A DNA stretch of 63,874 bases, the filler included, from Octopus bimaculoides (Eukaryota): the NCBI RefSeq assembly GCF_001194135.2. It is 8 parts of 8 records of this genome, joined end to end, with 100 filler letters (N's around TTAATTAATTAA, not from the genome) between each part and the next. Parts side by side here need not be neighbours in the genome. Positions count along the whole stretch, not along the records: positions 58,345 to 60,601 come from NW_026362038.1; 7 more parts are not named here. The stretch is one strand, 5' to 3'. The notes beneath the pieces are model-generated. The model saw only the letters and a program-made list of their open reading frames with translations, had not been told where the DNA came from and searched no databases. The position numbers and the translations under genes are program-made. Below, in pieces: positions 58,854 to 60,601 of the stretch (its first letter is position 1; every line of letters begins with the position of its first letter).

Positions 58854-58994
58854 GTTTACGTCCCATTAAACCAAATTTTATGGAGTCGAAAAAACATCAA
58901 TTAAAGAGAAAACAAGAAATTAGAAACCATGATGATGATGTTGATGATGATGTTGAATGGCTCCCAAGTTACAAAAAGAAAAGACAGCGACCAG
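58854..58994 (+). CDS. Internal coding exon resembling the PRDM9 KRAB C-terminal exon
   Basis: Poly-T + gtcAG acceptor, CAG|GTAATT donor, 141 nt, phase 1-1; GLRPIKPNFM..DDDVDDDVEWLP versus vertebrate PRDM9 GLRATRPAFM..DTEDSDEEWTP (from recall). Confidence 0.65.
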
Positions 58995-59011
58995 GTAATT
59001 CAGTTACTTTC

Positions 59012-59117
59012 TTTTACTTGTTTCAGTCATTTGACTGCGGCCATGCTGGAGCACCGCCTTTAGTCGAGCAAATCGACCCCAGTACTTATTCTTTATAAGC
59101 GTAGTACTTATTCTATC

Positions 59118-59120
<3 letters not shown>
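59012..59120 (-). mobile_element. OK-like SINE tail fragment
   Basis: ttacttgtttcagtcatttgactgcggccatgctggagcaccgcc..aatcgaccccagtacttattc. Confidence 0.78.
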
Positions 59121-59147
<27 letters not shown>

Positions 59148-59150
<3 letters not shown>

Positions 59151-59304
59151 TCATCATCGTTTAACGTCCGCTTTCCATGCTAGCATGGGTTGGACGATTT
59201 GACTGAGGGCTGGTGAAACACCAGGCTCCAATCTAATTTGGCAGAGTTTCTACAGCTGGATCCCCTTCCTAACACCAACCACTCAGTGTAGTGGATGCTT
59301 TTAC
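59148..59304 (-). mobile_element. (GAT)n-tailed dispersed repeat (cut by gap)
   Basis: Reverse complement of 38209-38369. Confidence 0.78.
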
Positions 59305-59808
59305 NNNNNNNNNNNNNNNNNNNNNNNNNNNNNNNNNNNNNNNNNNNNNNNNNNNNNNNNNNNNNNNNNNNNNNNNNNNNNNNNNNNNNNNNNNNNNNNN
59401 NNNNNNNNNNNNNNNNNNNNNNNNNNNNNNNNNNNNNNNNNNNNNNNNNNNNNNNNNNNNNNNNNNNNNNNNNNNNNNNNNNNNNNNNNNNNNNNNNNNN
59501 NNNNNNNNNNNNNNNNNNNNNNNNNNNNNNNNNNNNNNNNNNNNNNNNNNNNNNNNNNNNNNNNNNNNNNNNNNNNNNNNNNNNNNNNNNNNNNNNNNNN
59601 NNNNNNNNNNNNNNNNNNNNNNNNNNNNNNNNNNNNNNNNNNNNNNNNNNNNNNNNNNNNNNNNNNNNNNNNNNNNNNNNNNNNNNNNNNNNNNNNNNNN
59701 NNNNNNNNNNNNNNNNNNNNNNNNNNNNNNNNNNNNNNNNNNNNNNNNNNNNNNNNNNNNNNNNNNNNNNNNNNNNNNNNNNNNNNNNNNNNNNNNNNNN
59801 NNNNNNAG

Positions 59809-60133
59809 ACCGGGCGTTGTGGGTGTTTATTAAGCAAAAACAACCTAAAGCTCCACGTGGCTCCGGCAGGGGATGGTGGCGAACCCTGCTGTACTCTTCC
59901 ACCACAACTTTCTCTCACTCTTACTTCCTGTTTCTGTTGTACCTGTAATTCAAAGGAGTCAGCCTTGTCACACTGTGTCACGCTGAATATACCCCGAGAA
60001 CTACGTTAAGGTAAGGGTACATGTGTCTGTGGAGTGGTCAGCCACTTGCACGTTAATTTCACGATCGGGCTGTTTCGTTGATCGGATCAACTGGAACCCT
60101 CGATGTTGTAAGCGACTGATTGCCAACAACAAC
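59809..60133 (+). mobile_element. OR1-like SINE lacking its head (cut by gap)
   Basis: agaccgggcgttgt..ggaaccctcg..tgccaacaacaac. Confidence 0.82.
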
Positions 60134-60266
60134 AGTATATCTATGATTGCATATATATATATATGTTATTGTATAATACAAATATCTTTTTTTCCTGCAG
60201 CCCTCTGGCTTGCCACTATATGTTGAAACATCCAACCCCATGATGGCTTGGAAAAAGAGATGATAA

Positions 60267-60298
<32 letters not shown>

Positions 60299-60339
60299 GT
60301 TGGTTTTGGTGGTGATGGTGATGATGATGAGATTTTTAC

Positions 60340-60601
60340 CTGCAGAACTGGTTGTTTCTGATAACTGTGCTCCAGCAATGGAAACGGTCTTTGTTTTCAG
60401 TTGTTCACAGTGTGATATACCAAGATCTTTGGCGTATTCTTCTCCATACCAGACAAGTAATTCTTCACCAGGAACAATGTTTCTTAATGCTCTATAGTAA
60501 ATATTACCATTGTACTGAAAAGCAGTTAAATTCTGTTCTTCTTCCGTCCTTGCGCAGTTTACATATCGCATCCAATTAGAAATTGTCACATTCATTGCAT
60601 C
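60340..60601 (-). CDS. PR/SET-domain exon of a PRDM7/9-like histone methyltransferase (5' end lost in gap)
   Basis: [62 protein letters not shown] matches the PRDM9 motif [19 protein letters not shown]...ELLVWYG.EY...LGI; no stops; phase-1 donor GCAG|GTAAAA at 60339. Confidence 0.9.

What the first reader, a model, noticed from the sequence alone, without database searches (positions are those of the whole stretch)
58854..60601. PRDM9-like gene pieces (KRAB-type exon and PR/SET exon) on opposite strands 1.3 kb apart
Seen: a clean phase 1-1 exon GLRPIKPNFM..DDDVEWLP on + and an intact PR/SET exon [20 protein letters not shown] on -, each on its own short contig flanked by gaps and repeats. Known: vertebrate PRDM9 has the order KRAB-SSXRD-PR/SET-ZnF, and its exon after KRAB-A starts G|LR..P.FM in phase 1. 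Inferred: both belong to one PRDM9-type gene with a flipped contig, or to a rearranged or duplicated locus. A KRAB-bearing PRDM9 in an octopus bears on recombination-hotspot control and on the origin of KRAB. No KRAB-A, SSXRD or zinc-finger exon is visible, so they may lie in gaps.
Basis: partly seen in the sequence, partly recalled or inferred. Interest (0 to 1): 0.75.

Follow-up and report, generated by a model that had tools for sequence, protein, structure and literature searches.

The report
Two PRDM9 exons on misjoined contigs
The piece holds two intact coding exons of a PRDM9-type meiotic histone methyltransferase gene, a kind already known from other molluscs, and their odd back-to-back placement is most likely a scaffolding error in a fragmented assembly.

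Summary
Both exons are real. On the + strand, 58854-58994 is a 141-nt phase 1-1 exon with good splice sites. A profile of the region after KRAB-A ('ancestral KRAB-B') from 28 KRAB-bearing PRDM9 proteins finds it at E=3.7e-10, and none of 20,000 shuffles comes close. On the - strand, 60601-60340 is the last PR/SET exon, cut at its 5' end by the contig edge. Pfam gives PRDM2_PR at 1e-28. Solved PRDM9 structures score about 20 bits above any other PRDM paralogue, and the equivalents of catalytic Y341 and Y357 are kept. Intron positions and phases of both exons match the PRDM9-like genes of a chiton and a scallop. In those genes four exons and 5-10 kb separate the two. Here they are 1.3 kb apart, convergent, on two sub-kb contigs across an N gap. 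That cannot be the native layout, and a misplaced, flipped contig is the simplest reading, but I could not test it because no cephalopod sequence was reachable. KRAB-bearing PRDM9 is already described in molluscs (limpet, mussel, bivalves), so this is a new member of a known kind and says nothing new about the origin of KRAB. KRAB-A, SSXRD, the first two thirds of SET (with Y276) and the zinc fingers are not in the piece.

The parts
58854..58994 (+). Ancestral KRAB-B exon of a PRDM9-type gene (141 nt, phase 1-1). Motif residues: P7 at 58871-73, F9 at 58877-79, M10 at 58880-82, conserved W at 58958-60.
   Evidence: A profile of 28 KRAB-bearing PRDM9 proteins scores it 32.6 bits, E=3.7e-10 among 112 six-frame segments. 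The real peptide alone scores 35.2 bits; the best of 20,000 shuffles reaches 15.6. It aligns at residues ~50-105, just after KRAB-A, in mollusc, annelid, amphioxus and vertebrate PRDM9. The exon start (G|L) and phases are the same as in chiton and scallop.
58837..58853 (+). Polypyrimidine tract and AG acceptor of the + exon
   Evidence: Read directly: aaatttttttttttgtcAG|GTTTAC. The position is orthologous to the chiton and scallop acceptors.
58995..58996 (+). GT donor of the + exon (CAG|GTaatt)
   Evidence: Phase 1, as in chiton exon 2 and the scallop exon.
59305..59806 (.). Assembly gap (502 N) between the two short contigs. No coding sequence abuts it.
60340..60601 (-). Last PR/SET-domain exon of a PRDM7/9-subfamily gene. 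Its 5' end is cut by the contig edge and it ends in phase 1. The Y341 equivalent is at 60494-60496 and the Y357 equivalent at 60446-60448.
   Evidence: Pfam PRDM2_PR 1.1e-28 and SET 1e-8. PDB hits: PRDM9 80-82 bits, PRDM11 62, PRDM14 61, all others 55 or less. It is 62-73% identical to 24 KRAB-bearing PRDM9 proteins and 51-59% to PRDM1-like, PRDM11 and PRDM14. The end phase matches chiton and scallop.
60338..60339 (-). GT donor of the SET exon (CAG|GTaaaa on the minus strand)
   Evidence: It lies 25 codons after ..DLGI. The chiton and scallop donors lie 22 and 19 codons after ..ELGI, also in phase 1.

Best explanation
The piece carries two functional-looking exons of a PRDM9-family gene. One is the exon that follows KRAB-A (ancestral KRAB-B plus the acidic ..EW.PS.. 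stretch). The other is the last exon of the PR/SET methyltransferase domain.

Shown: the homology, the splice sites, the conserved intron positions and phases, and two of the three catalytic tyrosines.

Inferred: both belong to one gene with the usual order KRAB - SSXRD - zinc knuckle - PR/SET - C2H2 array. On this reading their placement (1.3 kb apart, pointing at each other, on contigs of 960 and 795 bp that break in repeats) is a scaffolding artefact. The small right-hand contig would be flipped and put in the wrong slot, and the contigs with the four intervening exons lie in gaps or elsewhere.

By homology, the protein would bind DNA through its zinc-finger array and trimethylate H3K4 and H3K36 on nearby nucleosomes with the PR/SET domain. 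It would use the KRAB-related N-terminus for protein contacts that link marked sites to the meiotic break machinery. Whether it really positions recombination hotspots in this animal is not shown.
For: Identity of the + exon. Its best matches are scallop PRDM9/7-like proteins, 47-49% identical over 47 aa at residues 60-102.

Identity of the SET exon.

Same gene structure as chiton Liolophura (exon 2 of 132 nt, phase 1-1, G|LPVTKPEFM; last SET exon of 286 nt, phase 0-1) and scallop Pecten.

In chiton, four exons (77, 136, 77 and 201 nt) and 5.2 kb lie between the two exons. In scallop the distance is 10.4 kb. The 1.3-kb adjacency here therefore cannot be native.

Taken as printed, each exon would sit antisense inside the other's intron. 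That needs far more special pleading than a flipped 795-bp contig.

Both contigs start or end in interspersed repeats and microsatellites, which is typical of short-read contig breaks.

No other PRDM9 exon is in the piece.

Both exons are open with conserved key residues, so they are not old pseudogene debris.
Against: No second assembly, long read or transcript of this or any cephalopod species could be reached, so misassembly is argued and not shown.

Molluscs and cnidarians often carry several PRDM9 copies and truncated paralogues. Three PRDM9-like genes lie on one Solemya contig and there are several in Mytilus (bioRxiv 10.64898/2026.09.07.749791). The two exons could therefore come from different copies.

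No cephalopod PRDM9-like protein appeared among the best 120 of 231 hits of a mollusc PRDM9 profile. That fits poor assembly, but it would also fit a disrupted gene.

The NJ grouping of the SET exon with PRDM9 has only 58% bootstrap on 56 sites, with three outgroup subfamilies.
Confidence: 0.62

Rival explanations
1. The arrangement is real. The two exons belong to two PRDM9-like copies, or to a locus rearranged by an inversion or a partial inverted duplication. At least one copy would then be truncated.
For: PRDM9 copy number is unstable in invertebrates. Gene models with two to four PR domains were found (P0024, P0025, P0030). Three PRDM9-like genes lie on one Solemya contig and there are several in Mytilus and Pecten. 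Birth and death of truncated paralogues is reported in cnidarians (bioRxiv 10.64898/2026.09.07.749791).
Against: It needs each exon to sit antisense within the other's intron. A copy joining only these exons would lack the first two thirds of the PR/SET domain. Both exons keep splice sites and key residues. Sub-kb contigs bounded by repeats and gaps are where scaffolders err.
Confidence: 0.25
2. The exons are remnants of a PRDM9 gene that has been broken up and is no longer functional in this lineage.
For: No cephalopod PRDM9-like protein was seen in the protein searches. PRDM9 has been lost repeatedly in vertebrates (PMC5519329). The layout as printed is non-functional.
Against: There are no stops or frameshifts in either exon. 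The splice sites are intact. The aKRAB-B motif residues (P7, F9, M10, W), [10 protein letters not shown], and the Y341 and Y357 equivalents are all kept. Identity to distant PRDM9 proteins (about 70%) is as high as between other phyla.
Confidence: 0.1
3. The SET exon belongs to another PRDM subfamily, and the + strand 'exon' is a chance open frame in low-complexity sequence.
For: Pfam finds nothing in the + peptide. Part of it is encoded by a GAT-rich tandem repeat. The Pfam PR-domain model is not subfamily-specific.
Against: Profile E=3.7e-10, with no shuffle coming close. The exon boundaries and phases are orthologous. PRDM9 outscores every other solved PRDM by about 20 bits. Finding a KRAB-B-type exon beside a PRDM9-like SET exon by chance is very unlikely, because only PRDM9 combines the two.
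Confidence: 0.03

Closest known systems
Mollusc PRDM9-like genes, e.g. Liolophura sinensis XP_064595822.1 (chiton), Pecten maximus XP_033725916.1 (scallop), Lottia gigantea ESP03842.1
   Same: The KRAB-related N-terminus is followed by GL..KP.FM ... acidic run ... EW.PS. The PR/SET C-terminus has NWMR(Y/F)VNCAR..EQN..A(F/Y)Q..YYR..ELLVWYG. The intron positions and phases around both exons are the same.
   Different: Only two of about nine exons are visible here, and they are in an impossible relative placement. The octopus KRAB-B spacer is longer (W at position 36 rather than about 31) and includes a perfect 12-nt tandem duplication. The + exon is at most 49% identical to any of them.
Vertebrate PRDM9 (human and mouse; structures 4IJD, 6NM4, 4C1Q)
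   Same: The SET exon is 68% identical over the core 56 residues. The Y341 and Y357 equivalents are kept. The KRAB-B motif P7, F9, M10, W is as defined in PMC8835667. The exon after KRAB-A starts at a split Gly codon.
   Different: Hotspot-positioning function is shown only in some vertebrates. Pfam KRAB and SSXRD models detect the mammalian N-terminus but not the mollusc ones. There is no information here on the zinc-finger array or on Y276.
SSX proteins and coelacanth KRAB zinc-finger proteins (other carriers of ancestral KRAB-A/B)
   Same: They share the PxFM-type motif after KRAB-A (PMC8835667). IKPNFM here resembles the coelacanth PKPDFM.
   Different: SSX proteins are confined to mammals and the coelacanth family to Latimeria (PMC8835667). 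Neither has a PR/SET domain.
PRDM11 and PRDM14 (next-best PRDM paralogues)
   Same: They have the PR-domain fold and the NWM.YV..(S/A)R..EQNL motif.
   Different: They score 62 and 61 bits against 80-82 for PRDM9, and are 59% and 56% identical against 62-73%. They have no KRAB-related exon.

Membership tests
PRDM7/9 subfamily of PR-domain proteins | The PR/SET domain groups with PRDM9 rather than with other PRDM paralogues | tested here: met
   PDB ranking: PRDM9 80-82 bits, PRDM11 62, PRDM14 61, PRDM12 55, PRDM2 53, PRDM10 50, PRDM1 49, PRDM4 47, PRDM16/MECOM/PRDM5 34-36. An NJ tree of 56 sites groups it with 24 KRAB-bearing PRDM9 proteins against PRDM1-like, PRDM11 and PRDM14, with bootstrap 174/300. 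Only the last third of the domain is available, and a full PRDM1-17 phylogeny was not possible.
PRDM7/9 subfamily of PR-domain proteins | KRAB-related N-terminal domain (KRAB-A) | not testable with these tools
   No KRAB-A exon is in the piece. It would lie upstream of 58345, in sequence that was not given.
PRDM7/9 subfamily of PR-domain proteins | Ancestral KRAB-B stretch after KRAB-A (P at B7, FM at B9-10, conserved W; PMC8835667) | tested here: met
   GLRPIKPNFM has P7, F9 and M10. W is present at position 36, where the PRDM9 group has it at about 31. Profile hit at E=3.7e-10. The exon boundaries are orthologous.
PRDM7/9 subfamily of PR-domain proteins | SSXRD motif and PR zinc knuckle between KRAB and SET | not testable with these tools
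   Neither is present in the piece. In chiton they are on exons 4-5, between the two exons seen here.
PRDM7/9 subfamily of PR-domain proteins | C-terminal tandem C2H2 zinc-finger array in one large exon | not testable with these tools
   No zinc-finger coding sequence is in the piece.
Catalytically competent PRDM9 (as in PMC5519329) | Tyrosines aligning to human Y276, Y341 and Y357 | tested here: inconclusive
   The Y341 equivalent (60494-96) and the Y357 equivalent (60446-48) are both Tyr (alignment; chain numbering plus 194 lands on both tyrosines). Y276 lies in an upstream exon that is not in the piece.
One PRDM9 gene containing both exons | Same strand, KRAB-B exon upstream of the SET exon, intervening exons present, one transcript | tested here: not met
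   As assembled, the exons are convergent, 1.3 kb apart across a gap, with none of the four intervening exons. This probably reflects the assembly rather than the genome. No transcript or second assembly was available.
Hotspot-positioning PRDM9 (functional sense) | Rapidly evolving zinc fingers, germline expression, co-occurrence with ZCWPW1/2 | not testable with these tools
   This needs the zinc-finger exon, population or between-species data, and expression data.

The most novel reading that the evidence does not exclude
The convergent layout is real. On that reading the lineage's PRDM9 locus has been broken by an inversion or a partial inverted duplication, recently enough that both exons still look intact. 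That would be an independent invertebrate loss, or loss in progress, of PRDM9. It would fit the absence of any cephalopod PRDM9-like protein among the hits.
Probability: 0.1. Interest if true: 0.5.

Novelty: new member of a known kind. Interest (0 to 1): 0.27.

Why it matters
Only modestly. PRDM9 with a KRAB-related N-terminus is already documented across molluscs and other protostomes, so this adds a lineage, not a principle, and it does not change the account of where KRAB came from. No cephalopod PRDM9 protein turned up in very large protein collections, and no paper in the held library describes one. These two exons therefore show that the gene, or a recent copy of it, exists in this genome. 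They also give exact anchors for recovering the full gene from a better assembly. [quoted passage not shown] Those are the marks of PRDM9-directed recombination.

Tried and rejected
- Pfam on the + peptide found nothing. The PDB sequence search on it also found nothing. The word-indexed protein search found no candidate. Homology showed only with a purpose-built profile.
- The word-indexed search with the SET exon returned only short ORF-type proteins, at most 74-76% identical, and none was a cephalopod.
- The two closest short hits were looked up for context. They are 0.6-1 kb contigs from ERR12370320 and ERZ17096855 and say nothing about organism or neighbours.
- Rfam and tRNA scans of the piece, run to type the SINE-like repeats, found nothing.
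- tblastn of 13 full PRDM9 proteins against the piece found no further exon.
- My exact spliced mapping failed for the scallop gene. Its boundaries were read from tblastn plus the sequence instead.
- The query for one search was a chimera of both exons. Some alignments ran across the artificial junction (query 21-48 into SET), so I ignored them and re-scored each exon separately.
- I looked for an overlap between the contig ends that would close the gap. The contigs share only a 41-nt SINE-like tail and microsatellites.
- A full PRDM1-17 phylogeny was not possible because no paralogue sequences could be fetched. PDB score ranking and a three-outgroup NJ tree were used instead.

Full report
**What is in the sequence.** The usable piece (58345-60601) is two short contigs, 58345-59304 and 59807-60601, separated by 502 N.

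On the + strand a T-rich tract and an AG acceptor (..tttttttttttgtcAG|GT) open an exon at 58854. A donor (CAG|GTaatt) closes it at 58994. The exon is 141 nt. Its first two bases complete a Gly codon and its last base starts the next codon, so it is phase 1-1. It reads (G)LRPIKPNFMESKKHQLKRKQEIRNHDDDVDDDVEWLPSYKKKRQRP(G).

On the - strand an open frame runs from the contig edge at 60601 to a donor CAG|GTaaaa, with the exon's last base at 60340 and end phase 1. It reads [87 protein letters not shown](G).

**The gap.** No exon or frame crosses the gap at 59305-59806. The + exon ends 310 nt to its left and the - exon ends 534 nt to its right. The sequence next to the gap on both sides is repeat-like and has no similarity to PRDM9 proteins. 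Frame continuity is therefore not the issue. The issue is whether the two contigs are neighbours, and in which orientation, and this piece alone cannot answer that.

**The SET exon.**
- Pfam gives PRDM2_PR at 1.1e-28 (profile positions 61-122 of 123) and SET at 1e-8.
- Against all solved structures, human and mouse PRDM9 score 80-82 bits. PRDM11 scores 62, PRDM14 61, PRDM12 55, PRDM2 53, PRDM10 50, PRDM1 49, PRDM4 47, and PRDM16, MECOM and PRDM5 34-36.
- In a scan of 1.84 billion representative proteins, 2,496 match at E≤0.001. Of the fetched hits, 28 carry a KRAB-related N-terminus, which among PRDM proteins only PRDM9 has.
- Over the 56-residue core the exon is 62-73% identical to 24 such proteins and 51-59% to PRDM1-like, PRDM11 and PRDM14. 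An NJ tree groups it with the PRDM9 set, but bootstrap support is only 58% on so few sites.
- Residues aligning to human Y341 (codon 60494-96) and Y357 (codon 60446-48) are both Tyr. An offset of 194 from the PDB chain numbering lands on both tyrosines. The catalytic triad is defined in PMC5519329. Y276 would be in an upstream exon that is not present here.

**The + exon.** Pfam, PDB and the word-indexed protein search find nothing in it. I re-scored it alone against the SET-containing hits. In about 20 full-length PRDM9-type proteins it aligns at residues ~50-105, always directly after the KRAB-A-like box. An example is scallop GLPAIKPDFMKCRRGQTKRKRKDMSDDSDDEWTPTSERRKSQ.

I built a profile from that region of 28 proteins, without the window's sequence. 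It hits the + exon frame at 32.6 bits, E=3.7e-10, among the 112 six-frame segments of the piece. The exon peptive alone scores 35.2 bits, and the best of 20,000 shuffles of it reaches 15.6.

The region is the 'ancestral KRAB-B' of PMC8835667, defined by P at B7, FM at B9-10 and a conserved W near B31 in PRDM9 orthologues. Here P7, F9 and M10 are in place and the W is at position 36. The spacer before the W contains a perfect in-frame 12-nt tandem duplication, TGATGATGATGT x2.2, encoding DDDV-DDDV. In a mammalian PRDM9 the Pfam KRAB match ends exactly at the Gly where this stretch begins. So the exon is KRAB-related but is not the KRAB-A box.

The best matches are named PRDM9-like or PRDM7-like proteins of scallops, mussels, oyster, chiton, limpet and sea slugs, the annelid Owenia, a nemertean and amphioxus.

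**Gene structure.** I fetched the chiton (Liolophura) and scallop (Pecten) loci and mapped their exons.
- In chiton, exon 2 is 132 nt, phase 1-1, and starts G|LPVTKPEFM.
- In chiton, the last SET exon is 286 nt, phase 0-1, and starts 17 codons before SNWMRF.
- The scallop has the same boundaries and phases.

Both exons in the window therefore sit at orthologous intron positions. That argues against a retrocopy and against a chance open frame.

In chiton, four exons (77, 136, 77 and 201 nt, holding SSXRD, the zinc knuckle and the first two thirds of SET) and 5.2 kb lie between the two exons. In scallop the distance is 10.4 kb.

**The arrangement.** Here the two exons are 1.3 kb apart and point at each other. 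Taken literally, each would lie antisense inside the other's intron. Flipping the right contig fixes the strand but still leaves four exons to hide in a nominal 502-N gap.

Both contigs are under 1 kb and break in interspersed repeats. A SINE-like tail with (CAA)n lies at 58345-58398 and again at 60094-60134, and there are (TA)n and (ATG)n runs.

The simplest reading is a scaffolding error, with a small exon-bearing contig flipped and put in the wrong slot. I put this at about 0.6.

A real rearranged or duplicated locus (about 0.25) cannot be excluded. PRDM9 copies and truncated paralogues are common in molluscs and cnidarians (bioRxiv 10.64898/2026.09.07.749791).

Dead remnants (about 0.1) are unlikely, given the intact frames, splice sites and key residues.

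**Comparison with what is known.** PRDM9 orthologues in a mollusc (Lottia, with a male-gonad EST) were reported in 2009 (PMC2779102). The Prdm7/9 subfamily was placed in the bilaterian ancestor in PMC4760075. An ancestral KRAB on mussel PRDM9 is discussed in PMC8835667, and a bivalve PRDM9 is catalogued in PMC10451705. A profile of mollusc PRDM9 N-terminus plus SET retrieves annotated PRDM9-like proteins from more than 15 mollusc genera.

A KRAB-bearing PRDM9 in another mollusc is therefore expected and does not bear on the origin of KRAB.

No cephalopod protein was among the best 120 of those 231 hits. No hit in any search was closer than 76% to the SET exon or 49% to the + exon. No paper in the held library describes a cephalopod PRDM9. 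The organism itself cannot be verified from this piece. The + exon's nearest relatives are lophotrochozoan, which is consistent with a mollusc.

**Likely function (inferred, not shown).** If the gene is complete it should work like PRDM9 elsewhere. The zinc fingers would bind DNA and the PR/SET domain would write H3K4me3 and H3K36me3. The KRAB-related N-terminus would mediate the protein contacts needed in meiosis (PMC5688218). Only full orthologues with all four domains and all catalytic tyrosines are associated with hotspot control (PMC5519329). Neither condition can be judged from two exons.

**Verdict.** The layout is most likely an assembly artefact. This is a new member of a known kind and of low to moderate interest.

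Noticed in passing
window 58592-58822: A 223-bp MITE-like element (58596-58818) with 12-nt terminal inverted repeats CCCTTTGGTGTT / AACACTAAAGGG (11/12). It is flanked on both sides by TTAA, the target-site duplication typical of piggyBac-type elements. It ends 31 nt before the + exon's acceptor region.
   Followed up: partly
window 58930-58956: A perfect 12-nt tandem duplication (TGATGATGATGT x2.2) inside the coding exon gives DDDV-DDDV. It is in frame and contributes to the longer spacer before the conserved Trp (position 36 rather than about 31). It looks like recent replication slippage in a coding acidic run.
   Followed up: partly
window 58345-58398 and 60094-60134: Two copies, 85% alike over 41 nt and in the same orientation, of the tail of an interspersed repeat that ends in a (CAA)n run. 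One lies at the very start of the left contig. There was no Rfam or tRNA match. This suggests that the contigs break inside a SINE-like family.
   Followed up: partly
window 60267-60330 and 59120-59148: An (ATG)n microsatellite (about 21 units, impure) lies in the intron just downstream of the SET exon's donor. A (TA)14 run lies in the intron after the + exon. Read through, the first produces the long spurious 178-aa ORF at 60059-60595.
   Followed up: no
proteins P0024, P0025, P0030: Some PRDM9-like gene models in the databases contain two to four PR/SET domains interleaved with zinc-finger arrays. These are either tandem gene copies fused by annotation or real multi-SET genes. Either way they show local PRDM9 duplication in several animals.
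   Followed up: no
mollusc proteins P0071, P0044, P0081, P0072: The Pfam KRAB and SSXRD models do not detect the KRAB-related N-terminus or the YPLR..NYM..EVPDDD motif of mollusc PRDM9-like proteins, although both are visible by eye in alignments. Domain-based surveys would score these genes as lacking KRAB and SSXRD.
   Followed up: partly
one search hit list: No cephalopod entry is among the best 120 of 231 matches to a mollusc PRDM9 profile, while bivalves, gastropods and a chiton are well represented. The cause could be fragmented cephalopod assemblies, missing annotation, or the make-up of the collection.
   Followed up: no
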